A DNA stretch of 60,171 bases, filler included, from Dugesia japonica (taxonomy: Eukaryota), in the NCBI GenBank assembly GCA_001938525.1. It is 5 parts of 5 records of this genome, joined end to end, with 100 filler letters (N's around TTAATTAATTAA, not from the genome) between each part and the next. Parts side by side here need not be neighbours in the genome. Positions count along the whole stretch, not along the records: positions 19,467 to 31,174 come from MQRL01535806.1; 4 more parts are not named here. One strand, given 5' to 3'. Shown here piece after piece: positions 19,467-31,321 of this stretch (position 1 is the first letter of the stretch; each line of letters opens with the position of its first letter). The position numbers were made by a program, and so were the translations under genes. Under the pieces are notes generated by a model, which saw only the letters and a list, made by a program, of their open reading frames with translations, was not told the origin of the DNA and made no database searches.

Positions 19467-19469
19467 AAA

Positions 19470-20060
19470 GAATTTCCGTAAAAATTCATCCCAAATTAAC
19501 CAATCTTGAGAAAATAATTGACCGAATCACCCAAAAATTAGTTAAACCGATCTCACCGAGGAAATATTTGACCGAATTCACCTAAACCTGTCAAAAACTC
19601 AATCACCCAAAAATTACCCAAACCGACCAATCGCGAGGAAATATTTGACCAAATTCACCGAGACCAATGAAAAATCAACCTTATTCCACCTCACCGAGAA
19701 AGTTTCAGACCAAATTCATCAGAACCAATCAAAATCCAACCAAATAAACCCAAACTTCTTAAACACGAAGAATTATTCAAGCAATTTTACCTGAACCAGT
19801 CAAAAATTGACCTCATTCAACCTCACCGAGGAAATATTGGACAAAATTCACTTGAACCAATCAAAAATCAACCGCGATCGACCTCACCGAATAAATTCCC
19901 AACTAAATACATAGGAAAAAAGTAACAGCACATTATTGCTTAAAAAGCCTAAAAAATTTCCCCAACTAAATACACAGGGAAAACGTAACACCACATTGCC
20001 GTCTAATAAGCCTAAAAAATTTTCCCAACTAAATACACAGGAAAAAAGTAACACCAGTTA
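19470..20060. repeat. Two adjacent degenerate minisatellite arrays (~60-76 bp unit, then ~62 bp unit x3)
   Basis: Recurrent CTCACCGAGGAAATATTTGACCAAATTCAC, then CCCAACTAAATACACAGGAAAAAAGTAACAC. Confidence 0.8.
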
Positions 20061-20159
20061 TACCTATTACGTAAAATTTCACCGATAAAATTAATCTCAT
20101 GACAGTGATAATATAGACATTGAAATCGTTATTTTAACTATTCGGGTGATGTACGGTAG

Positions 20160-20345
20160 TCAAATTAGCATTAACATTAACCTCATCATTAGCGTAATTA
20201 ATGTCATTATTATTATCTGCCCTTTCATCGTTATCGGTATTATGTTTATTACGATCATTATTCACCTGATTATATTCATATTAATAATGTGGTTATTATG
20301 AGCATCATTCTTATTAGTAATATTATGGGTACTATTATCATTTTT

Positions 20346-20380
<35 letters not shown>

Positions 20381-21060
20381 NNNNNNNNNNNNNNNNNNNN
20401 NNNNNNNNNNNNNNNNNNNNNNNNNNNNNNNNNNNNNNNNNNNNNNNNNNNNNNNNNNNNNNNNNNNNNNNNNNNNNNNNNNNNNNNNNNNNNNNNNNTA
20501 TTATTATTATTAATATAATTATTATTATTATTATCCTGATTATCAGTACTAATTTTAGTAATATTATCATTATTGCTATCATGATTATTATTATTAATAC
20601 TACCTGTATTATGGTTATTAATATTGCTAAAATTACTATCAAATCATTATTATTCTAATGTTATATAAATGTTCTTATTATTTTATCATTGCTTTAATGG
20701 ATGCCATTATTATTACTGTCAGTTTTTTTCTTGCCTTGTTATTATCACTATGGTCGCTACTGCTAGATGATTTATTATGGGATTTAGAATTCTCAGTTAT
20801 TATCATTAAAAATAATATAGTTATTCTCGGCAATACTGTATAATGACAATGAATATCCATACTATCTCACACATAATTATGCAGTTTAATACTATTATTA
20901 TCGTTACTTCTGCTGAGGACGTCATTAGAATTACCACTCCTGGGATAATGTTAAAGTAGGTGTTATGCCCGTATCAAGTTATTAAGTATCCATTACAACT
21001 AGTTAACATGATTCTAGTTAATTATAAATCGTACTCCACGATGTTCCATTCTAGTTATAA
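20160..21060. repeat. Degenerate (ATT/ATC)n low-complexity tract
   Basis: Pure (ATT)n core flanked by decayed triplets. Confidence 0.8.
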
Positions 21061-21087
21061 TAAACTTTTATAATTTAGTTCAGGTAG

Positions 21088-21275
21088 ATGTCTAGCATTC
21101 TGAAGGACACATCGAGCTTCATATGTCGGGAAAGAGAGCAATCACGGCGAAACCAGTTAATCGGTCATATCCTCTTTCATAATCTTGTTCTCTCCCGGAT
21201 GAACTAGACCTGAGATGTTTTAGGGTATTATAAATACTTCCTTGGGAGGTCGATATAGACAATGGCTCTTGTTAA
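21088..21275 (+). pseudogene. Disrupted paralog A1 of ORF 23537-23734
   Basis: MSSILKDTSSFICREREQSRRNQLIGHILFHNLVLS/[1-nt deletion]DELDLRCFRVL*ILPWEVDID aligns with A2. Confidence 0.75.
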
Positions 21276-21406
21276 TGAATGGCTAAATAAATTTTGGTGT
21301 CATCTAAATTCAGTGTTGCTTATTTATTTGATTTTGTCTTATAGACTTATTGCTTTCCGTATAAATGTTCTTGATTTTGTTAACAATGTTTTTAATTTCA
21401 GTTGAT

Positions 21407-21655
21407 ATGGAATTTATATTGGAAAGAGTCATCGACCGACGAACGCGTCGCATAATCTTTCGACGGCATAGAAATCCTTACAATCAAGACGCGGGCATTC
21501 TTTCTGATCAATCTAATCTACCTCCCGTGGAGGCTATGGTAGCCGGATCCAGAATTTTGGAGAGTGGCAAAACTATCAGGAATGGAATGGTGCATAACCA
21601 TGCAACCCCTTTCAGCAGTGCAAGCTTTTATTACGAACTTGCTCTGGGGTGTTAG
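21407..21655 (+). CDS. Arg-rich small protein B1 (82 aa)
   Basis: TTTCAG acceptor 5 nt before ATG; ERVIDRRTRRIIFRRHRNP is identical in paralog B2. Confidence 0.6.
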   Translation: MEFILERVIDRRTRRIIFRRHRNPYNQDAGILSDQSNLPPVEAMVAGSRILESGKTIRNGMVHNHATPFSSASFYYELALGC

Positions 21656-21962
21656 AGAACCCAAGGGTGCCGAAAAATCGTAGAACGTAGATCCAATAGC
21701 TAATACGGAGACTGGCCAGTAATTGTCAATACTAATTATGATTTAACTGTCAATTGAATAAATAGTTGTCTCAAGTTTTATAAGCAATCCGTTTCATTCA
21801 ACTTTATTTTTTTTAGTTCATTTATTTGTCGTTGTAACGAGAAATATTTCTTTTATTTCCATAATTAGTAAGGTTTGCAGTGTTGTATGCGAGTAGATGC
21901 TTTACGTACTTCGTCATTTTATTGTTGTCTGCATAGATTTCATTTAATATCCATTATTCTAG

Positions 21963-22299
21963 TGCATTCCTCTTTGAATCGCGCAGCTGGCCCGACTAAG
22001 AAAATCCGCGAGTCCAGTGAAGAATTAGAAATGACCTGTGACGTAAACAAGCTTGCTAAACGTCTCTAGGAAGCTGATATTGCGAACGCCAATAGTAAGG
22101 TGAGGTGATATAAAAAGAAATGCATGGCGTTCAAATCCGAAGCCGAGGCATCACACCAACAAGAGAGTATGGAAGGTTCAAATAGAGTCCTTCATTGAAA
22201 TTATCCGGTCCTAACAAGACCAAGAAACTGGTCCAGGACATCCTGAAATTAAAGACTGCGATGCTCCTCGAGCCTTTAATGGTCGATAAGCGACCTTAA
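21963..22299 (+). pseudogene. Decayed coiled-coil ORF C
   Basis: HSSLNRAAGPTKKIRESSEELEMTCDVNKLAKRL*EADIAN.. then TKKLVQDILKLKTAMLLEPL..* after a frameshift; AATAAA at 22317. Confidence 0.45.
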
Positions 22300-22423
22300 T
22301 GTTTATTGGTTTCATAAATAAATGATTCTTTTTGTGTAAATAAATTCTTCTTTCCGACTTATTCACTTAGCTAATTTTCATCTATTTTAAGAAAATAACT
22401 TATTTAATGATATATCTTATTTA

Positions 22424-22690
22424 GTGCCACAAATTAGATTTCCGACGATTCTACGCCGGTGTCATCGATTAATCACTAATTTGTTACTAGAACGTCACCT
22501 CAAACGACAAACTGAACGTGCTCTACTCAAACATCTCGCGCAACAGAATAGACTCATAAAAAGACTAGACCTCATCGTTAAGAAACAGGCAGATCTAGCC
22601 GAGCAGACTAAACAGCTCCTTCAAAAAAAAATCGATTTTCTGAAGATATATATTGCAAATTTATCTCGTCAGCTGGTAACAATGGAATGA
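22424..22690 (+). CDS. Small coiled-coil ORF D
   Basis: 88-codon open frame directly after a TTTAG acceptor; heptad pattern LAQQNRLIKRLDLIVKKQADLAEQTKQLLQKKI. Confidence 0.5.
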   Translation: MPQIRFPTILRRCHRLITNLLLERHLKRQTERALLKHLAQQNRLIKRLDLIVKKQADLAEQTKQLLQKKIDFLKIYIANLSRQLVTME

Positions 22691-23536
22691 CCAGGACGAC
22701 GAAACGTAGTTTAATTTTTTAGATGACAATCCCACACAGTGGTTAGACCCAGGTGCTATGGATCTCATGTAGTATGTATTAAAATATAAATTAGTTTTAA
22801 CGATTTATTAATTGATTATGAAATAAGGAAAGTAAAGAACCCGAAACAAAGATGTAAGAGTGAGCACCTCTCGTAAAGGTCGAAGGTCAACCGCTTTGCA
22901 TCGAAGATCTAACTTAGGAGCGTTAGATTAAATTCTTGAAAGGGATCTACTGAGAACCGTTTTTTTTTGAAAAAGTCAAAAACCAATAGGAAACAAGAAC
23001 CAAAAAATAAAAATAGTCAACCAACAGGAAAGTAGTCGGGTTGTATGAGAAAATGCTATAAACGCTTCCGAAAAAGTAGCCAAAATATCAACAATTTATC
23101 ATCAAATTCAAGTCTTAAAGGACTATTGACTAATTAGAAATCAATTCTTAGTTACTGTTTAAAAATTAGACTAACTGAAGTACTAACGTAGTCATTCCAA
23201 AGTGAAACCACCGAATTATTTGAAACTTCTAAAGTAAAGATATCGTAGTTTAACCAGATATAATTTTATTTAAAGGAAAAGGAAAAAGGAATATACTGTG
23301 ATGATCTGATGTAAGATTATTTTAAATTAATATTAATTTCATTTAAGTTAATTTTTCTTCTGTTAAGAACTAAATAATTATAAATATCGAAATTACAAAA
23401 AGAAATAGTAATTTAATTTAATTAAATCTGAAATCAAAAAAAAATAAAATCTTATAAGTGCATATGTTTTTTATTGAAATCATTTAAATTCAATTAAACA
23501 AGTTGCAAAAATAAACTATTTAAATCATTCAGGCAC

Positions 23537-23734
23537 ATGGCTACAATCCTGAGGGAGATTTTGAACCTAATTCGTCGAGAAAGGGAACAAGCCCGTCGTA
23601 AGCAATTGATTGGTCACCTCCTATTCCCTCATCTTGTTCTCTCCAAGGATGAAATGGATCTAAGGTGTTTCAGGGGATTATATCCCCTCCCTTGGGAGGC
23701 TGACTTGGACGTTAAACCTATCTATGAACCATAA
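23537..23734 (+). CDS. Small protein A2 (65 aa), unknown function
   Basis: CAG 4 nt before ATG; AATAAA immediately after stop; paralog A1 differs at many synonymous sites. Confidence 0.65.
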   Translation: MATILREILNLIRREREQARRKQLIGHLLFPHLVLSKDEMDLRCFRGLYPLPWEADLDVKPIYEP

Positions 23735-23840
23735 AATAAAATTCCGTGTTGACTATGCTCGTTGTTATTGCTTAACTAACTTTGTTTTTATATTTATAAA
23801 TGTCGAATTTTGTTGACGGTAATTTTAATTTCAGTCTTAA

Positions 23841-23969
23841 ATGGAATCGATATGGGAGAGGGTAATCGACCGCAGGACTCGCCGCATAATTTTCCGGCGA
23901 CATAGGAATCCGCAAAAAGTTTTAAAACTCAACATAGCCGCCATTTTGATTTTTGAAAATTCAATATAG
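23841..23969 (+). CDS. Arg-rich micropeptide B2 (42 aa; missed by the ORF track)
   Basis: MESIWERVIDRRTRRIIFRRHRNPQKVLKLNIAAILIFENSI*; TTTCAG acceptor 6 nt upstream. Confidence 0.55.
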   Translation: MESIWERVIDRRTRRIIFRRHRNPQKVLKLNIAAILIFENSI

Positions 23970-24549
23970 CTACTATTTTTATTTTTTTCTTAAATGTAAT
24001 AGGTATGCAACTCAGTTGCAACTCAGATGCAAAACACATACACTAAAAATTACTTGCCTATGAATTTTAAACTGTCTCATACCTTGCAAAATATAAAGTC
24101 TGTCTCATCACATGCTAAATATAGAGGCTCCAATGTTAAATATAGTGGCTCTCCATTAAAAATGTCAAGACTGCTCATACCATGCAAAATACCAAGACTC
24201 TCCGATATCTTGTATTAATTTCTTGTAATAATATCTTAAAAAATATCAAGACTGCCCAATATCCTGAATTAATATCTTTAAAAATATCAAGATTTCCCAA
24301 CTTATGCAAAATATAGAAACTCTGCATGCAAAATATTAAGACTGCCCCATCTCTTACATAAAAAAGTAATTTAATTAAATTAAATTTAATTTAATTATAA
24401 TAAAAAGATTTCCCCCCTTTGCAATGAAAATTTTCCAACCAAAATAATTTTTTTTGAATTTCCCGCCAAAAGTATTTTTTTTGAATTTCCCGCCAAAAAG
24501 ATTTTTTGAATTTACCACAAAAAACATTTTTTTAAATTTCTCGTCAAAT
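23937..24549. promoter_or_regulatory. YY1-like and tandem E2F-like motifs plus ATCAAGACTGCCC-type short repeats
   Basis: GCCGCCATTTTG at 23937-23948; GAATTTCCCGCCAAAA at 24456 and 24483; degenerate copies at 24508 and 24534. Confidence 0.45.
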
Positions 24550-25530
24550 AGTTTTCAAAATTATCAAGACTTTCCTCTTCTCCGTTCGAAAATCTTATAA
24601 AACAACACTTCCCGATCAAAATACCAAAAAAAAATAACCAAAAATACATCAAATACTAAAAAATGATATTACTTTCATTAAATTCATCAAATTAAGCAAT
24701 ATACAGCATTTTTTAAGAAATTAATTATTTCAAAAATTTATGATGTCATAACCAATCGACAGAAAAATTTCAAATAAATCTTATAAAATCCGATAATTAA
24801 TTCTCTTTCTACACATACCAACCTCCACCTCACGAAAAAAATTTTAACACACTTATACTACTTACAAAATAAACCAATCAAAATCAAGACCTTAAAATAA
24901 AAAATCAAAGCACATTCGACAACCAACTTCGTCACCATCATATTACATCTCCAACAAGCCATCAACCAACAAATTCCATCAACAACATAAAAACCTACAA
25001 CACTCACAAAAACCACCCACGATAACACATACGACTGTGTAGGACGAACCATCCATCCAAGCTCATAAGTCCTTTAGACAATATATAGACCAAATTTTTG
25101 TCCAACAATAAATAAATCTTCAAAATCCCAAAAAATTATCTCTAAGATCTCCAGCTACTCCTCCTCGTTTTTTCCCGTCTTTTACACACACAATTTGACC
25201 CACTTTTTAATAACCAACTTAACAACCGAAACATACACAAAATTTAAATTTTAAAAATACACACACACCTTCAGGATAAAAAAACCTGATAAGGTAAAAA
25301 AAAAATTTGATCCGATCAAAGAATTTTTGATCCCAAAAATCTTTAAAAAAAATATCACAAAAATCATGATTGAAAAACGCAGTTCAAGCGTATTGTGCTT
25401 CCGAGCTCCCCCGGGAAGGAGGGGGGCTCGCAATAATTGCACAAATTGTGCCGGTGTGCCACTATCTATCTACTTTTATTATTCTTTTTAATAGAGAAAG
25501 TTATTCTGATTCAAAAGGCGCGTTTATTAA

Positions 25531-25902
25531 ATGAGGAGAATCAAAAAAAATATGATAGGGGAATATAAAGGATATACAAATTATGTAAAATTAAATAATG
25601 AAGAATTATATCACGATCAAAAAGTTAATTTAACTTTCTTGAATAATCCTCCTAAATCTTATTCTAATTTATTATATATCGAAAAGAAAGGAAATCAAAT
25701 TATTATTAATCAAAATAATCGTCAAAATGAACAATACATTACCATAAAAAAAGGTTTTGAATTTGGTAAACTAGTTATAAGAGATAAAAATACGAGCGGA
25801 TATATTTATGAGTGTTTATCTTATGAAGCTAGCGACAAAACGAATAACAATGACATATATTTAGACAATTTTTTGCCCTTTATACTACACAAACAAGAGT
25901 AG
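25531..25902 (+). CDS. Intronless 123-aa ORF, virus/Maverick-like accessory protein
   Basis: AAATG start, open frame, tightly packed with same-strand neighbours. Confidence 0.45.
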   Translation: MRRIKKNMIGEYKGYTNYVKLNNEELYHDQKVNLTFLNNPPKSYSNLLYIEKKGNQIIINQNNRQNEQYITIKKGFEFGKLVIRDKNTSGYIYECLSYEASDKTNNNDIYLDNFLPFILHKQE

Positions 25903-25994
25903 CTCGTGATGTTAATAAAAATAATAATGAGCCAAATGAAACAATTATAAAATCTAAGTTGTATTAAAAGCATAAAATCTTAATTTTATTAGAA

Positions 25995-26617
25995 ATGGAG
26001 AAAGAATATGATCGTATTTATCCTGATATAAATGAGGAAGATAAAAATTTAGATCAACCAGTAAGAACGCCATATTTAGCTGATTATAAGTCAAAACCTA
26101 AAACATTAAGAATTAAAGATTTTGAAAATGATTTAACATTCTTAACACATAAAATAAATCATTATTATAAATCATATAGAAGATGGAAAATCTTTGATAC
26201 AGGTGTAAGATATACTGATATTTTAATAGGATGTTTATTTGGTGCCGCAGGTATAATAATAACCGTTTTATCTACAAATGGTATAGTTATTTAACTTTAC
26301 CTGTTATTATACTTGGTACATTTCCTTTAACAAATTCAATTATTCATGGTCTATTAAACATAGCTTTAATTAAACGAAGAAAGAAAAAGTATAATGATTT
26401 AATTAAAGAATTAGAAACTAGTAAAAATAAATTATTTCTATATCATCAGAGATGCTTACATTATAATATATTAATAGATGAAGAAATAAGTACTAGTAAA
26501 ACAATTGTTAGTGAAATCAAAAGTAAAATATTAAAGATTAAAAAAGACAGTATAAATGAAGATAATAAAGAAACAGAAAAAGATAATACTTTTTTATTAA
26601 CAAAGCTAAAAAAATAG
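25995..26617 (+). pseudogene. Frameshifted two-TM-helix protein of the kind recurrent in Maverick/Polinton-like elements
   Basis: IYP..LRIKDFE..YYKSYRRW, TM1 (ILIGCLFGAAGIIITVLSTNG), frameshift ~26290, TM2 (LPVIILGTFPLTNSII), RRKKKY..SKNKL..IDEEI helical C-terminus. Family assignment is from memory. Confidence 0.5.
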
Positions 26618-27070
26618 AATCTTAAATAAAACAATCTGCACCAAAAGTACGAAAGAAAATGAATAAAAAATAGATTATAATTGTTTAAATTGCATTAAAT
26701 TAAAAATTAAATATAAAAATTAAAAAATGAGTTATAAGAGCAATATTAATATCTTTTTAAAAGAATTGGTATTAACCAAGTATTAGAAAATAAAATTATA
26801 GAAGAATATAATAAAATTCCACAACATAATAAAAGACTGCAATCTAATTTCATAGCCACTTTATATTTAAATTTCTTTCATTCTAGTGAGGTTTAGGAAC
26901 TGTGTTACTTCTTTAGTCAAAGGACAAGAAAATAAAAACTTGATCGAAATATTAAAACATTATAATGTATATAATAATAATTTATTTACTTGGAATGATC
27001 CTCGTGCAAATTTATATAATCGATGGGTGTAAGATGTGTAATTATTCAATTAATATTATTTTAATAAAAA

Positions 27071-27588
27071 ATGGCAAATAAATTTATCGAGTGTATTTCT
27101 AAAGATAAAGATTTGAAATTAAAATTACAAGAAGATGTAAATATGTATAATTCATTAGCTATTGGTGGACAAGGTGAAGCAGGAAGAACATTTAAAATAA
27201 GAGCTAAACAATTTTAACAGTGTGCTGATATAATGGGTGGAACAATATATAATCTCGCTTCTGAAAAGCATGAATTAGCTAATCAAAATAAACAATTAAT
27301 GAAAATAATCATTTAACTAATCAATTAAAAGAGCACAATAATTATGATGTAAAAGATATTCAAAGAATTACATAAGAATATGCATCGTCAAAAATGAATG
27401 AAAATCAAAATGAAGTCATATTAACTGAATTGAGCAGATATAAGAACATTTTACGAAACCACTTTAAGCAGTGAATATTTTATTATCAAGATTTGTTAAA
27501 TGTCATTAGTACAAAAGGAGAAGTTTCAGCAGAGTTAAAAGAAAATTTTTATATCATTAAACACTTTACTGGAGGAAAACAAATTTGA
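27071..27588 (+). pseudogene. Decayed intronless ORF (~170 codons)
   Basis: MANKFIECISKDKDLKLKLQEDVNMYNSLAIGGQGEAGRTFKIRAKQF*QCADIMGG.. to ..HFTGGKQI*, with 3 stops and a frameshift. Confidence 0.45.
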
Positions 27589-27640
27589 AATAGAGTAATT
27601 TTATATATTTGTTTAGCTTTTAATAACCTGATAATCTGAG

Positions 27641-27765
27641 TGACATCCCTGAAAAGAAATCCAGTGGAAATCCAAGAGAAGTGAAATTGGTTGTAATTTT
27701 GTTAAAAATTTATCGAAACAATAAAGAATGCAATCAATAATTAAGTCCAACAATTAATTTATTTT
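27641..27765 (+). mobile_element. Degenerate copy of the HHR-bearing repeat
   Basis: Decayed core CTGAAAA..GAAA at 27649 and 3' part CAATAATTAAGTCCAACAATTA. Confidence 0.4.
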
Positions 27766-28452
27766 GTCGAATCTCGCAGGTTCGAGCTGTCCCACGCAAT
27801 CAATAAACTTGAGCAGTTCTGCTCACACTAATACTTTTCTTTTTCCATCTTGGAAATTCCCTCTACACGTTCTCATTTTATTACAACTTCTCCATCCACA
27901 ACTTCTTCATTTTTCCGTGTTCTCGATTCTGCTCTTCTTCCTCCTTTCCTGTTGTGATCCTTCTCTATCTGATCTTTCTCTTCTTCCTCATTCAAATATC
28001 TTCATTTCGACAGCAGATAATCTAGTTTGTTTCTCATGTGCTTCGTTTCAATTTTCTTCTCTCTCTCCAGTCGTTCTTCATCGATATAATATTGATTGTC
28101 TCGCCAAAAATTTCGAGATTCCAGCTTTCATTTTCTTGGAAATAAGAAAAAGGTTTCTAAAATATTTAAAATATTAAAATAAAATTCTTTCAAAATTTGA
28201 AAAAGTTTTTATTTTTTATTAATTTTTAATAAATGTTTTAATTAAAAAAATAATAGAATTAATTATAAAGGATTATTTTGGATAAGAATTGTATAATTAA
28301 AAAATGTTTCAAATAAATAAATAAAATAATTTTAATTTTAATAATAACCAATAGAATCTCTGGTTTATGTACACAAAACATCAATATATCCAATAGGAAT
28401 AGTGCAGATATAATAACAAATTATTTAAACAGTTTATTTAATGAAATCTTTA

Positions 28453-30393
28453 TCATTCTCCTCCTTCTCCTCCAGATAGTAATCTTCTCCTCATTTCCAG
28501 ACACGAATGGAATTGTAGAGGTAAATTTATTTGACCTACAGAACGAGAATGGTCAAACATGTTTTCTAAATATTGCATTGAATGGTTATAATTGGAAATT
28601 AATGACTCCAAAGATTCCTCATCTGTACTATTTGAGTGATCAATTTCATAACGAATACTGAAAATCAAGCAATTAATATTGTATATCATGTCAAATAATC
28701 CTCCAAATAAATAATTTAAATTATATATATAATTTAAATAATGACATTTTATCTTAGATATTTGATCATCATAATCATCATCATCATCAGAATTGTCATT
28801 ATCATCATCAACAAAATTGTCATCATCATCATCATCACCACCAGAATTGTCATCATCACCATCATCAAAATTGTCATCATCATCATTTAAATAATGACAT
28901 TTAATCTTAGATATTTGATCATCATAATCATCATCAGAATTGTCATTATCATCATCAACAAAATTGTCATCATCATCATCATCATCAGAATTGCCATCAT
29001 CAAATATCATAATTTTGTGATATAGTATATATTTTGAATAAAATTCAAAAAAAGCCTTTATATTAACAAATTCATGAAAATGTTTTCCTAATGATTCAAT
29101 TAGATCAAGTTTTACAAATATTGATTGGATATTTTGATGTTTTTTCGTTATTTCATTATTGATGAAGCATGTTTTATCTGACTGCCAAATAACTGTCAGA
29201 TTTATTTGTTCCATCATTTCCATCAAATCTGTAAAATTAGTTATTTCCAATAATTCTTCAATCAATAAACTTGATATTTGCAAACAATTTTCCACAAGGC
29301 AATGTAAAATATTGTTATAATTAGATTTGAAATAATCAATAGTTGTTGGTGTTTCACATTGTATCTTGTTGTTTGTGAATTGATCAGTTTGAATAATAAT
29401 TTGTAAAGTAGTTAATAATAATTCTCCGTTATGAAATGGACAACTTCCATAAATTATGCTAAACATCTGGATGCAATCGATACAAATTTTATGATTACAA
29501 TTGGGGAATTTTGCATAGCAAATATTATTATCTTCACAAGTAACAAAATAATTATCTCCACATATTAAACACATTTCTTCTGTTACCAAATGAAAATTAG
29601 GTTCGATTTGTTCGTATAATTTATTATTATATCGTATAAGAGAAATAATTTCGGTTTTAATTTGTTTCTTCATTTCACACATAGCATGGATATGGTTCAT
29701 TACTGTAGCAAGATGTCTTTGTTTGATATTTGCAATTTCTGGTTTACTTGACAATTCATCTCGTAATTGGTCGCAAGATCTAAGCAAATGCTTTATTAAT
29801 TTTGAGAAATCTTCAAATACGGATTTGGTAAAACAATAAATGTAATTTAATTCGTTGGTTTGAATTTCTTTGTCTTTCAAATAGATTTCTTCAAATATAA
29901 TTTGCTTTTTAGATTTCTCAGTGTAAAAATAACATTCATCATAAATTACTGTTAATTGTGCAATAATTGCTATAAAATCGAACGATAAGCTACGATCATT
30001 TGATGATGACAAATTTAACATTTCTAATAAATTACTTAGAATTATATTGATTTCCTCCACATCTTTAATAAATTTAGAAAAATATTGTGATAAATTCTTT
30101 TCGATCTCTTTCTTGATAAATTCTGAATTATTTATTATTTCTTTTCTAATTACACTGTTCTGATAATGATGTATACTTTTTTTTATTTCTGGTTGATTTT
30201 TTCTGAGAGTTGTAACAGTTCTACATTCAATATTATCAAATGGACATTTAACTGTTTCATTAAAAACGATTTCATTAGTACATTCCTCGCAAATAGAATA
30301 TCTACAATTTCCTAATTTAAATGAGGTTTCATTGCTAAATTCAGCATAGCAAATCAAACAAACTTCTTCAGTAAAATTACTTTCTAAATTCAT
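28453..30393 (-). CDS. Intronless protein with two RING-type zinc fingers, helical/coiled-coil regions and an Asp-rich repeat (putative E3 ligase, 646 aa)
   Basis: CLIC..CRYSICEEC..CPFD and CLIC..CNHKICIDC..CPFH. First ATG at 30393 (the ORF track starts at an upstream TTG, 30432). Confidence 0.8.
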   Translation of the reverse strand: MNLESNFTEEVCLICYAEFSNETSFKLGNCRYSICEECTNEIVFNETVKCPFDNIECRTVTTLRKNQPEIKKSIHHYQNSVIRKEIINNSEFIKKEIEKNLSQYFSKFIKDVEEINIILSNLLEMLNLSSSNDRSLSFDFIAIIAQLTVIYDECYFYTEKSKKQIIFEEIYLKDKEIQTNELNYIYCFTKSVFEDFSKLIKHLLRSCDQLRDELSSKPEIANIKQRHLATVMNHIHAMCEMKKQIKTEIISLIRYNNKLYEQIEPNFHLVTEEMCLICGDNYFVTCEDNNICYAKFPNCNHKICIDCIQMFSIIYGSCPFHNGELLLTTLQIIIQTDQFTNNKIQCETPTTIDYFKSNYNNILHCLVENCLQISSLLIEELLEITNFTDLMEMMEQINLTVIWQSDKTCFINNEITKKHQNIQSIFVKLDLIESLGKHFHEFVNIKAFFEFYSKYILYHKIMIFDDGNSDDDDDDDNFVDDDNDNSDDDYDDQISKIKCHYLNDDDDNFDDGDDDNSGGDDDDDDNFVDDDNDNSDDDDDYDDQISKIKCHYLNYIYNLNYLFGGLFDMIYNINCLIFSIRYEIDHSNSTDEESLESLISNYNHSMQYLENMFDHSRSVGQINLPLQFHSCLEMRRRLLSGGEGGE

Positions 30394-30754
30394 TATTGAT
30401 AAATATTGAATAATAATTGATTTATCAAACAAATTTTATTTGATTTCATTATTTCAAATTTTTCCAAAATGCATTTAATGAATAATAATTATTGAAATAA
30501 TTATTTAAACTATAAAATATTAAAATACAAAATTGTTTTATCAAATTAAAACTTTTAACTTGAAAATTGATTAAAATAATAATTATATGAATATTCCAGT
30601 GTTGTATGTTTGTTTTTTTTCCATGTTTGTTTGTATTTTTGTGCGGGATGCTCAATTTTAATCAAAAAATTTAAAATATTGTGATTTTTTATTGTAGCTT
30701 TTAAATTTTAAATTATTATATTAAAAACCTAGTGTTGTGTGTTTGTTTGTTTTA

Positions 30755-30982
30755 CAGGGTTTTTCATTATATTTCATTCTGGTTTTCAAAATATTTAACT
30801 ATTCTTTAAATTGTACAAAATGCAAATGTATTTGAACAAATGTAAATAATTGAACAATTTTTCAACAAGCATAGTGAAATATTTTGAACAGATTATTAAA
30901 TATATTGAAAAGATTATTAAACTTTTTTGAAAAGATTATTAAATATTTTGAAAACCAGAGTGAAATATAATGAAAAACCATG
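30755..30982. mobile_element. Tc1/mariner-type MITE
   Basis: ~44-bp TIRs CAGGGTTTTTCATTATATTTCATTCTGGTTTTCAAAATATTTAA; TA TSD. Confidence 0.85.
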
Positions 30983-31321
30983 TATTTGAAAATTTATGAA
31001 AGTTTAAAAAATTCGTAAGATTTAATGAAAAACTCTCAGAAAATGGAGAAACTTCAATGATGATAATTTTAAATATTTTAATGAAAATTTTAAATCTTTC
31101 AATGAATTTAATAATTACAATTATTGTGAGAATAATTGTTGGACTTAACCATTGATCGGATTTGAGATTTCATTNNNNNNNNNNNNNNNNNNNNNNNNNN
31201 NNNNNNNNNNNNNNNNNNTTAATTAATTAANNNNNNNNNNNNNNNNNNNNNNNNNNNNNNNNNNNNNNNNNNNNTCAATATTTATACGCTAAAAAAATTT
31301 ATTTGCGTTTATTGTATTATA

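What the first reader, a model, noticed from the sequence alone, without database searches (positions are those of the whole stretch)
21081..23969. Polycistronic micro-ORF cassette (A1-B1-C-D..A2-B2) in a Polinton-like element
Seen: six short same-strand ORFs, each immediately preceded by a pyrimidine-rich AG acceptor. The distance from AATAAA to the next acceptor is 110 (A1-B1), 102 (C-D) and 94 nt (A2-B2); B1-C is longer (200 nt). The A-B pair is duplicated with the layout preserved. Established: ~100-nt intercistronic spacing is the hallmark of SL trans-spliced operons in nematodes; flatworms also trans-splice; adenoviruses instead splice a common leader to successive acceptors with alternative polyadenylation. 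Inference: a virus-like mobile element expressing orphan micro-proteins from an operon. Caveat: the AUG-ending flatworm SL would be out of frame or hit a stop for several ORFs, so a cis-spliced shared leader is equally plausible.
Basis: partly seen in the sequence, partly recalled or inferred. Interest (0 to 1): 0.8.

Follow-up and report, generated by a model that had tools for sequence, protein, structure and literature searches.

The report
Decayed foreign mini-gene cluster, operon unproven
An AT-rich genome of unknown species carries two adjacent, decaying fragments of foreign-looking DNA with several very small genes that have no known relatives; the proposed "operon" layout is really there but is built from motifs common in this DNA, and it cannot be shown to work from sequence alone.

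Summary
The coordinates, the AG sites, the AATAAA sites and the 110/200/102/94-nt distances are correct. The A-B pair is duplicated (21059-21477 vs 23510-23911, E 4e-32). A and B are real protein-coding genes. Codon positions 1 and 2 are 83-96% identical between the copies, position 3 only 42-47%, and dN/dS is far below 1. The cassette is compositionally foreign: GC3 is 0.34-0.49 against 0.10-0.21 in neighbouring ORFs, with different Arg and Leu codon choice. It has no relatives in any search run.

Only A2 and B1 are intact ORFs with an ATG. A1 is broken, B2 is truncated, C is closed in all frames and D has no ATG. Acceptor-like sites and AATAAA are no denser here than in the rest of the piece. 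No Polinton hallmark gene or terminal repeat lies in the piece.

The A-B spacer is conserved. It holds both a branch-point/pyrimidine/CAG block and a TATAAAT box, so trans-splicing and separate promoters fit about equally. The nematode Ur motif is absent at five of six sites.

Best reading: two recent, decaying fragments of an unknown compact virus-like or mobile element. They are not a working operon at this locus. Interest is modest.

The parts
20900..21056 (+). GC-richer stretch (33-38% GC) upstream of A1 with no counterpart in copy 2; possibly the tail of a further gene of fragment 1
   Evidence: GC profile. No similarity to the sequence upstream of A2 beyond the last ~30 nt.
21059..21477 (+). 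Repeat copy 1: A1, the A-B spacer and the first 24 codons of B1
   Evidence: blastn self-comparison, 68% over 421 columns, E 4e-32.
21088..21285 (+). Gene A1, broken: one frameshift and one in-frame stop relative to A2
   Evidence: dN/dS against A2 is far below 1 in both segments, scored apart.
21286..21291 (+). AATAAA after A1, followed by a GT-rich stretch
21360..21402 (+). Conserved control block before B1: TATAAAT, a TGTTRAC match to the branch-point pattern 18 nt before the AG, then a 13-nt T-rich block ending in CAGT
   Evidence: Spacer alignment score 53 against 24 +/- 5.6 for shuffles.
21407..21756 (+). Gene block B1. The ORF as it stands is 21407-21655 (82 codons, ATG). The 42-47% GC block runs on to the AATAAA at 21757; if coding once filled the block, two stops now cross it.
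   Evidence: dN/dS of the first 24 codons against B2: pN 0.045, pS 0.86.
21757..21762 (+). AATAAA after B1
21963..22316 (+). Block C: 42-45% GC, at least 6 stops in every frame, longest open run 34-37 codons; a heavily decayed gene or not coding at all
22317..22344 (+). Two AATAAA sites (22317, 22339) after block C
22424..22777 (+). Gene block D. The ORF as it stands is 22424-22690 (88 codons, no ATG). The GC-rich block runs on to an ATTAAA at 22778.
22830..22960 (+). Block F: a short 38-42% GC stretch, open for at most 31 codons; a possible further gene remnant and the right end of fragment 1
23510..23911 (+). Repeat copy 2 (fragment 2): A2, the spacer and the first 24 codons of B
23537..23734 (+). 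Gene A2, intact, 65 codons; its stop runs into the AATAAA at 23735
23795..23835 (+). Conserved control block before B2 (TATAAAT, TGTTRAC 18 nt before the AG, T-rich block ending in CAGT)
23841..23969 (+). Gene B2, truncated: homologous to B1 for 24 codons (to 23912), then unrelated AT-rich repeat sequence closes the frame

Best explanation
The stretch holds two neighbouring, decaying fragments of a compact, compositionally foreign multigene DNA. It was most likely left by an unknown virus-like or mobile element. Fragment 1 (about 20900-22960) carries gene blocks A1, B1, C, D and a remnant F, all on the + strand. Fragment 2 (23510-23911) carries a diverged second version of A and the first 24 codons of B.

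Shown: A and B are protein-coding and evolved under purifying selection for almost the whole time since the two versions split. The breaks and the truncation are therefore recent, which fits two related elements inserted side by side better than an old local duplication. Shown: codon use differs sharply from the neighbouring ORFs. Shown: each block ends near an AATAAA and is separated from the next by a 100-200-nt AT-rich spacer, and the A-B spacer is itself under constraint.

Inferred: in the source element each small gene ends at its own poly(A) site. How the 5' ends are made is open. I lean slightly to separate, tightly packed transcription units (a TATAAAT box 38-40 nt before a CAGT start region). 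Resolution of a polycistronic transcript by splicing at the conserved CAG is almost as likely. At this locus the cassette is not a working unit.
For: Duplication.

Purifying selection: B has pN 0.045 against pS 0.86; the A segments have pN 0.15-0.18 against pS 0.64-0.74. Identity at codon positions 1, 2 and 3 is 0.83-0.96, 0.83-0.92 and 0.42-0.47.

Foreign composition: GC3 is 0.34-0.49 against 0.10-0.21. Arg is encoded by CGN in 22 of 36 cases against 8 of 27, and Leu by TTA in 4 of 36 against 57 of 90. GC blocks of 42-47% are separated by 22-27% spacers.

Decay.

Spacer constraint: alignment score 53 against shuffled 24 +/- 5.6, and 72% identity over aligned pairs.

TATAAAT: 6 of the 10 + strand copies in the piece lie in the cassette, five of them in spacers upstream of gene blocks, against 3 copies on the whole - strand.

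No relatives.
Against: No hallmark gene of any virus or transposon, no terminal repeats and no target-site duplication were found, so 'mobile or viral' rests on composition and on the two diverged copies only.

Highly expressed host genes in AT-rich genomes can have raised GC3, so a host origin is not excluded.

The TATAAAT-to-CAGT spacing of 38-40 nt is longer than the usual ~30, and before A the spacing differs between the copies (59 vs 152 nt).

The host genome is absent from the protein collections: exact look-ups and the search with the neighbouring 646-aa ORF were blank. 'No relatives' is therefore weaker than it sounds. D was only searched by patterns, Pfam and PDB.

A neighbouring ORF pair also changes frame, so some frameshifts could be assembly errors.
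Confidence: 0.55

Rival explanations
1. One reading: the source element transcribes the genes as one polycistronic RNA, which is cut at each AATAAA and capped by spliced-leader trans-splicing at the CAG a few bases before each ATG.
For: The distances from AATAAA to the acceptor (94-200 nt) fall within the 50-200-nt range reported for C. elegans and T. spiralis operons (PMC7668243). Before B, a 13-nt T-rich block ending in CAGT and a YNYURAC match exactly 18 nt before the AG are conserved in both copies, although synonymous sites are saturated. The ATG lies 4-7 nt after the AG in A and B.
Against: The Ur motif TAYYTT expected about 50 nt upstream is absent at five of six sites. Acceptor-like sites and AATAAA are at background density. 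An acceptor-like site inside the D block (near 22722) shows that such sites arise by chance here. C and D have no ATG after their AG. No SL RNA gene was found in the piece. The neighbouring 646-aa ORF has no acceptor near its ATG. The host is unknown. A conserved TATAAAT in the same spacer is not needed by this model.
Confidence: 0.25
2. A cis-spliced shared leader, as in adenovirus late units: one promoter and leader exon upstream are spliced alternatively to each acceptor, with alternative polyadenylation.
For: The same acceptor and poly(A) layout as above.
Against: No leader exon or conserved donor can be pointed to. Similarity between the copies starts only ~30 nt before A, so no shared upstream exon lies within reach.
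Confidence: 0.07
3. A host cluster of lineage-specific small genes with an old tandem duplication, now partly pseudogenised; nothing mobile or viral.
For: No mobile-element hallmark was found. Same-strand small genes with AATAAA ends are ordinary eukaryotic features.
Against: Codon use and GC3 differ strongly from all four neighbouring ORFs. B2's 24 codons stayed under purifying selection (pN 0.045 with saturated pS). This would not be expected if B2 had been a truncated, functionless duplicate since an old local duplication.
Confidence: 0.12
4. The blocks are ordinary exons of one spliced host gene, or chance ORFs in non-coding DNA.
For: The AT-rich spacers end in AG, as introns do.
Against: A and B each keep their own ATG and A its own stop in both copies. 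An in-frame stop sits directly before the B2 ATG. No donor is conserved before the A stop. The codon-position pattern excludes chance ORFs for A and B.
Confidence: 0.03

Closest known systems
SL2-type trans-spliced operons of nematodes (C. elegans, Trichinella spiralis)
   Same: Same-strand genes. The 94-200 nt between poly(A) signal and acceptor-like CAG lie within the reported 50-200-nt range (PMC7668243). The ATG follows a few bases after the CAG.
   Different: The Ur motif is absent at five of six sites. No leader, SL RNA gene or host identity is known. Most genes here are broken. The motifs are at background density.
Polinton/Maverick elements
   Same: Only the general idea of a foreign, possibly mobile DNA carrying small orphan genes.
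   Different: No protein-primed polymerase, integrase, packaging ATPase, protease or capsid genes, and no terminal inverted repeats, in the 11.7-kb piece.
Adenovirus-type late unit (shared leader, successive acceptors, alternative poly(A) sites)
   Same: A series of acceptor-like sites, each followed by a coding block and a poly(A) signal.
   Different: No leader exon or donor was identified. No protein similarity to anything. Not testable from this piece.
Compact DNA-virus gene units with a TATA box and CAGT start site (baculovirus early promoters; Blissard et al. 1992, as cited in PMC10891889)
   Same: A conserved TATAAAT followed by a conserved CAGT upstream of B in both copies. Genes are tightly packed, each with its own AATAAA.
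   Different: The spacing is 38-40 nt rather than about 30. A has CAGG and an irregular TATA distance. No homology to any baculovirus or other viral protein was found.
Endogenous viral elements and other integrated foreign DNA arrays
   Same: A compositional island, fragmentary and truncated copies side by side, and recent stops and frameshifts in genes that evolved under selection before insertion.
   Different: No recognisable viral gene, so the donor cannot be named.

Membership tests
SL2-type trans-spliced operon | Same-strand genes with 50-200 nt between the poly(A) site and the downstream trans-splice site | tested here: met
   The distances are 110, 200, 102 and 94 nt. Both motifs are at background density, and A1-B1 and A2-B2 are one observation.
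SL2-type trans-spliced operon | [quoted passage not shown] | tested here: not met
   Absent within 120 nt upstream of A1, B1, C, A2 and B2; present only before D, at -41.
SL2-type trans-spliced operon | Spliced leader found on the mRNAs, in a host that has SL RNA genes | not testable with these tools
   No transcript data. No SL RNA family hit in the piece. Host unidentified.
Polinton/Maverick | Protein-primed DNA polymerase B, retroviral-type integrase, packaging ATPase, protease and capsid genes | tested here: not met
   Nine ORFs across the piece were scanned, including every one above 90 codons that does not cross the N run. None gave a Pfam hit to any of these, and all ORFs are listed. 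This holds for this 11.7-kb piece only.
Polinton/Maverick | Long terminal inverted repeats flanking the element | tested here: not met
   No inverted repeat brackets the cassette.
Shared-leader cis-spliced unit (adenovirus-like) | A common upstream leader exon with a donor joined to successive acceptors | not testable with these tools
   No conserved donor or leader is visible. Similarity between the copies starts ~30 nt before A.
TATA plus CAGT-initiator transcription units | A TATA box about 30 nt upstream of a CAGT start site before each gene | tested here: inconclusive
   B has TATAAAT 40 and 38 nt before the A of CAGT, conserved in both copies. A has CAGG and distances of 59 and 152 nt. 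C and D have no TATAAAT. There is strand-specific enrichment, 6 of 10 copies.
Ubiquitin-like fold (for protein B) | Significant sequence or fold match to the beta-grasp family | tested here: not met
   The only hit was an engineered ubiquitin variant at E 0.25. No Pfam hit at E<=10. The model had pLDDT 49.7 and no Foldseek match.

The most novel reading that the evidence does not exclude
A and B belong to a family of orphan micro-proteins carried by a so far undescribed virus-like element. Its genes would be transcribed together and resolved by the host's spliced-leader trans-splicing, making it a virus-like element organised as a true eukaryotic operon.
Probability: 0.1. Interest if true: 0.75.

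Novelty: new member of a known kind. Interest (0 to 1): 0.3.

Why it matters
If the source element could be found intact, it would add a new family of small, selected proteins with no known relatives. It would also show how a compact foreign element packs and expresses genes in a very AT-rich host. As it stands, this locus is a decayed remnant. Its main value is as a probe (A2, B1, D) for finding better copies in the source genome.

Tried and rejected
- Ciliate code (TAA/TAG read as sense), which would have lengthened B, A and D: rejected. The neighbouring 660-codon ORF in 26% GC DNA contains no TAA or TAG.
- One spliced host gene: rejected (see rivals).
- Coding on the minus strand: no long frames.
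- B as a ubiquitin-like protein: not supported.
- A2 structure: a single N-terminal helix and low confidence, uninformative. No fold search was run on it.
- Giant-virus origin of the whole piece: no viral-contig relatives of the 646-aa ORF, and coding density is low.
- Head-to-tail concatemer of one small circular genome (2.43-2.45 kb between copy starts): it does not fit, because the copies differ mainly at synonymous sites.
- Searches for relatives that found nothing:
  - viral contigs for A2, B1 and D;
  - word search for B1, A2 and the 646-aa ORF;
  - 1.84 billion representatives for B1;
  - metagenome contigs for B1 and A2;
  - prokaryotic genomes for D;
  - PDB;
  - Pfam and PHROGs;
  - Rfam and tRNA scans.
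- The sigma-70 and terminator scan is irrelevant for a eukaryote.

Full report
THE PIECE. Positions 19467-31174 are very AT-rich (22-28% GC). They contain an island of 35-39% GC at about 20970-22970 and again at 23470-23970. At 100-nt resolution the island splits into blocks of 42-47% GC: about 21088-21280, 21400-21750, 21950-22300, 22430-22770, 22830-22960, 23530-23735 and 23835-23912. These are separated by spacers of 22-27% GC.

THE OBSERVATION.
- The duplication is real: 21059-21477 against 23510-23911, E 4e-32. C and D have no second copy.
- 'Six ORFs' is too generous.
  - A2 (65 codons) and B1 (82 codons) are open and start with ATG.
  - A1 has one frameshift and one in-frame stop relative to A2.
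  - B2 is homologous for 24 codons only, then runs into unrelated repeat DNA.
  - The C block has at least six stops in every frame.
  - D is open for 88 codons but has no ATG.
- The B1, C and D blocks are each about 350 nt long, longer than the open frames inside them. Part of the 'micro' size may therefore be decay. If B1 once filled its block, two stops now cross it.
- The motifs themselves are not special here. Acceptor-like sites and AATAAA are as dense on the other strand and in the rest of the piece, and about one ATG in ten has such a site within 12 nt upstream.
- An acceptor-like site followed directly by ATG also lies inside the D block. This shows that chance makes such sites in this DNA.

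WHAT IS BEYOND CHANCE.
- The two A-B copies differ mainly at synonymous sites. Identity is 0.83-0.96 at codon positions 1 and 2 but 0.42-0.47 at position 3.
- For B, pN is 0.045 against pS 0.86. For the two A segments, scored apart, pN is 0.15-0.18 against pS 0.64-0.74. A and B are therefore genuine protein-coding genes.
- Even the truncated B2 shows almost no non-synonymous change. Both copies were thus under selection for nearly the whole time since they split, and the breaks and the truncation are recent.
- This pattern fits two related but distinct elements inserted next to each other better than an old local duplication.

FOREIGN COMPOSITION. The cassette ORFs have GC3 of 0.34-0.49 against 0.10-0.21 in four neighbouring ORFs. 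Arg is encoded by CGN in 22 of 36 cases against 8 of 27, and Leu by TTA in 4 of 36 against 57 of 90. Saturated synonymous divergence with a preserved, non-host codon bias suggests that the family evolved in a different mutational setting and entered this genome recently.

RELATIVES. None were found.
- Pfam and PHROGs gave no hit for A2, B1 or D.
- PDB gave only B1 against an engineered ubiquitin variant at E 0.25. Pfam, the low-confidence model (pLDDT 49.7) and Foldseek do not back this.
- Viral contigs gave nothing for A2, B1 or D.
- The word search gave nothing for B1 or A2.
- All 1.84 billion representatives gave nothing for B1.
- Metagenome contigs gave nothing for B1 or A2, and prokaryotic genomes nothing for D.
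- Caveat: the host genome itself is evidently not in these collections. Exact look-ups and the search with the neighbouring 646-aa ORF were also blank. D did not get a full protein search.

THE 'POLINTON-LIKE' LABEL. The piece holds no hallmark gene and no bracketing inverted repeats. Within the range I was allowed to use, the label has no support.

EXPRESSION SIGNALS.
- The A-B spacer is conserved above shuffles (score 53 against 24 +/- 5.6). It is 72% identical over aligned pairs, well above third-position identity.
- Its conserved blocks, in order, are:
  - the AATAAA with a GT-rich stretch after it, a normal poly(A) site layout;
  - TATAAATGT;
  - a TGTTRAC that fits the branch-point pattern YNYURAC, with its A exactly 18 nt before the AG in both copies;
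  - a 13-nt T-rich block ending in CAGT.
- The TATAAAT reads as a promoter box, 40 and 38 nt before the A of CAGT. TATAAAT is enriched on the + strand of the cassette: 6 of 10 copies in a quarter of the piece, five of them in spacers upstream of blocks, against 3 on the whole minus strand. The post-hoc binomial P is about 0.02, my own arithmetic.
- The nematode Ur motif is absent at five of six sites (motif and expected position from PMC7668243).
- Similarity between the copies begins only about 30 nt before the A start, at another AATAAA (21059 and 23510). That site lies about 20 nt before the A acceptor. This spacing does not fit the ~100-nt rule, and the site could equally be a TATA-like element.
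- Sequence alone cannot decide between the models. I rate them as follows:

| How the 5' ends are made | My weight |
|---|---|
| Separate tightly packed units | about 0.4 |
| Spliced-leader trans-splicing | about 0.25-0.3 |
| Cis-spliced shared leader | under 0.1 |

CODE AND STRAND CHECKS. A ciliate-type code was considered, because B, A and D would lengthen under it. It was rejected: the neighbouring 660-codon ORF has no TAA or TAG. The minus strand has no long frames.

VERDICT. This is a real, compositionally foreign cluster of small genes, present as two decaying fragments. It is most likely a remnant of an unknown compact virus-like or mobile element. The operon reading is neither shown nor excluded, and the locus itself is not functional. 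Interest is modest.

LIMITS. The host is unidentified and there are no transcript data. Frameshifts could in part be assembly errors, since a neighbouring ORF pair also changes frame. The segments either side of the A1 frameshift were scored apart.

Noticed in passing
window 28453-30432 (- strand): A 659-codon intronless ORF (646 codons from its first ATG). It has a weak RING-finger match at residues 25-65, below Pfam's cut-off, and what looks by eye like a second Cys-rich stretch. A D/N-rich region is encoded by 54-nt and 24-nt tandem repeats (28766-29002). No relatives were found in the word search or in viral contigs.
   Followed up: partly
window 30753-30984: A 232-bp hairpin-like element with 58-nt terminal inverted repeats (88% complementary). 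The arms begin TACAGGG on the left and end in the matching complement ...TGTA on the right. By eye it looks like a Tc1/mariner-type miniature element.
   Followed up: no
window 27727-27756 and 31133-31162: A 30-nt inverted repeat pair (87% complementary), 3.4 kb apart, brackets the RING-like ORF. It may be chance or the ends of another element.
   Followed up: no
window 25995-26617 (+ strand): Two overlapping ORFs (99 and 128 codons) in different frames look like one membrane-protein gene. It is interrupted either by a one-base frame change or by a short GT..AG intron; several models of 83-134 nt restore one frame. This bears on whether the assembly has indel errors.
   Followed up: partly
window 19525-20056 and 24432-24555: C-rich tandem repeats flank the cassette region on both sides: 77-nt and 63-nt units on the left, 25-27-nt units on the right. 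The repeat families differ between the two sides.
   Followed up: no
window 20381-20498: A run of N inside an (ATT)n / (TAT)n microsatellite.
   Followed up: no
window 21812-21830, 23374-23394 and 23975-24007: Short echoes of the cassette's control motifs outside their expected places. A copy of the A1 start motif lies in the long B1-C spacer (79% of 19 nt). A TATAAAT-containing match to the pre-B2 block lies 160 nt before A2 (86% of 21 nt). A weak copy of the B2 start region lies 153 nt downstream of it (79% of 33 nt). These may be remnants of further rearranged copies, or chance in AT-rich DNA.
   Followed up: partly
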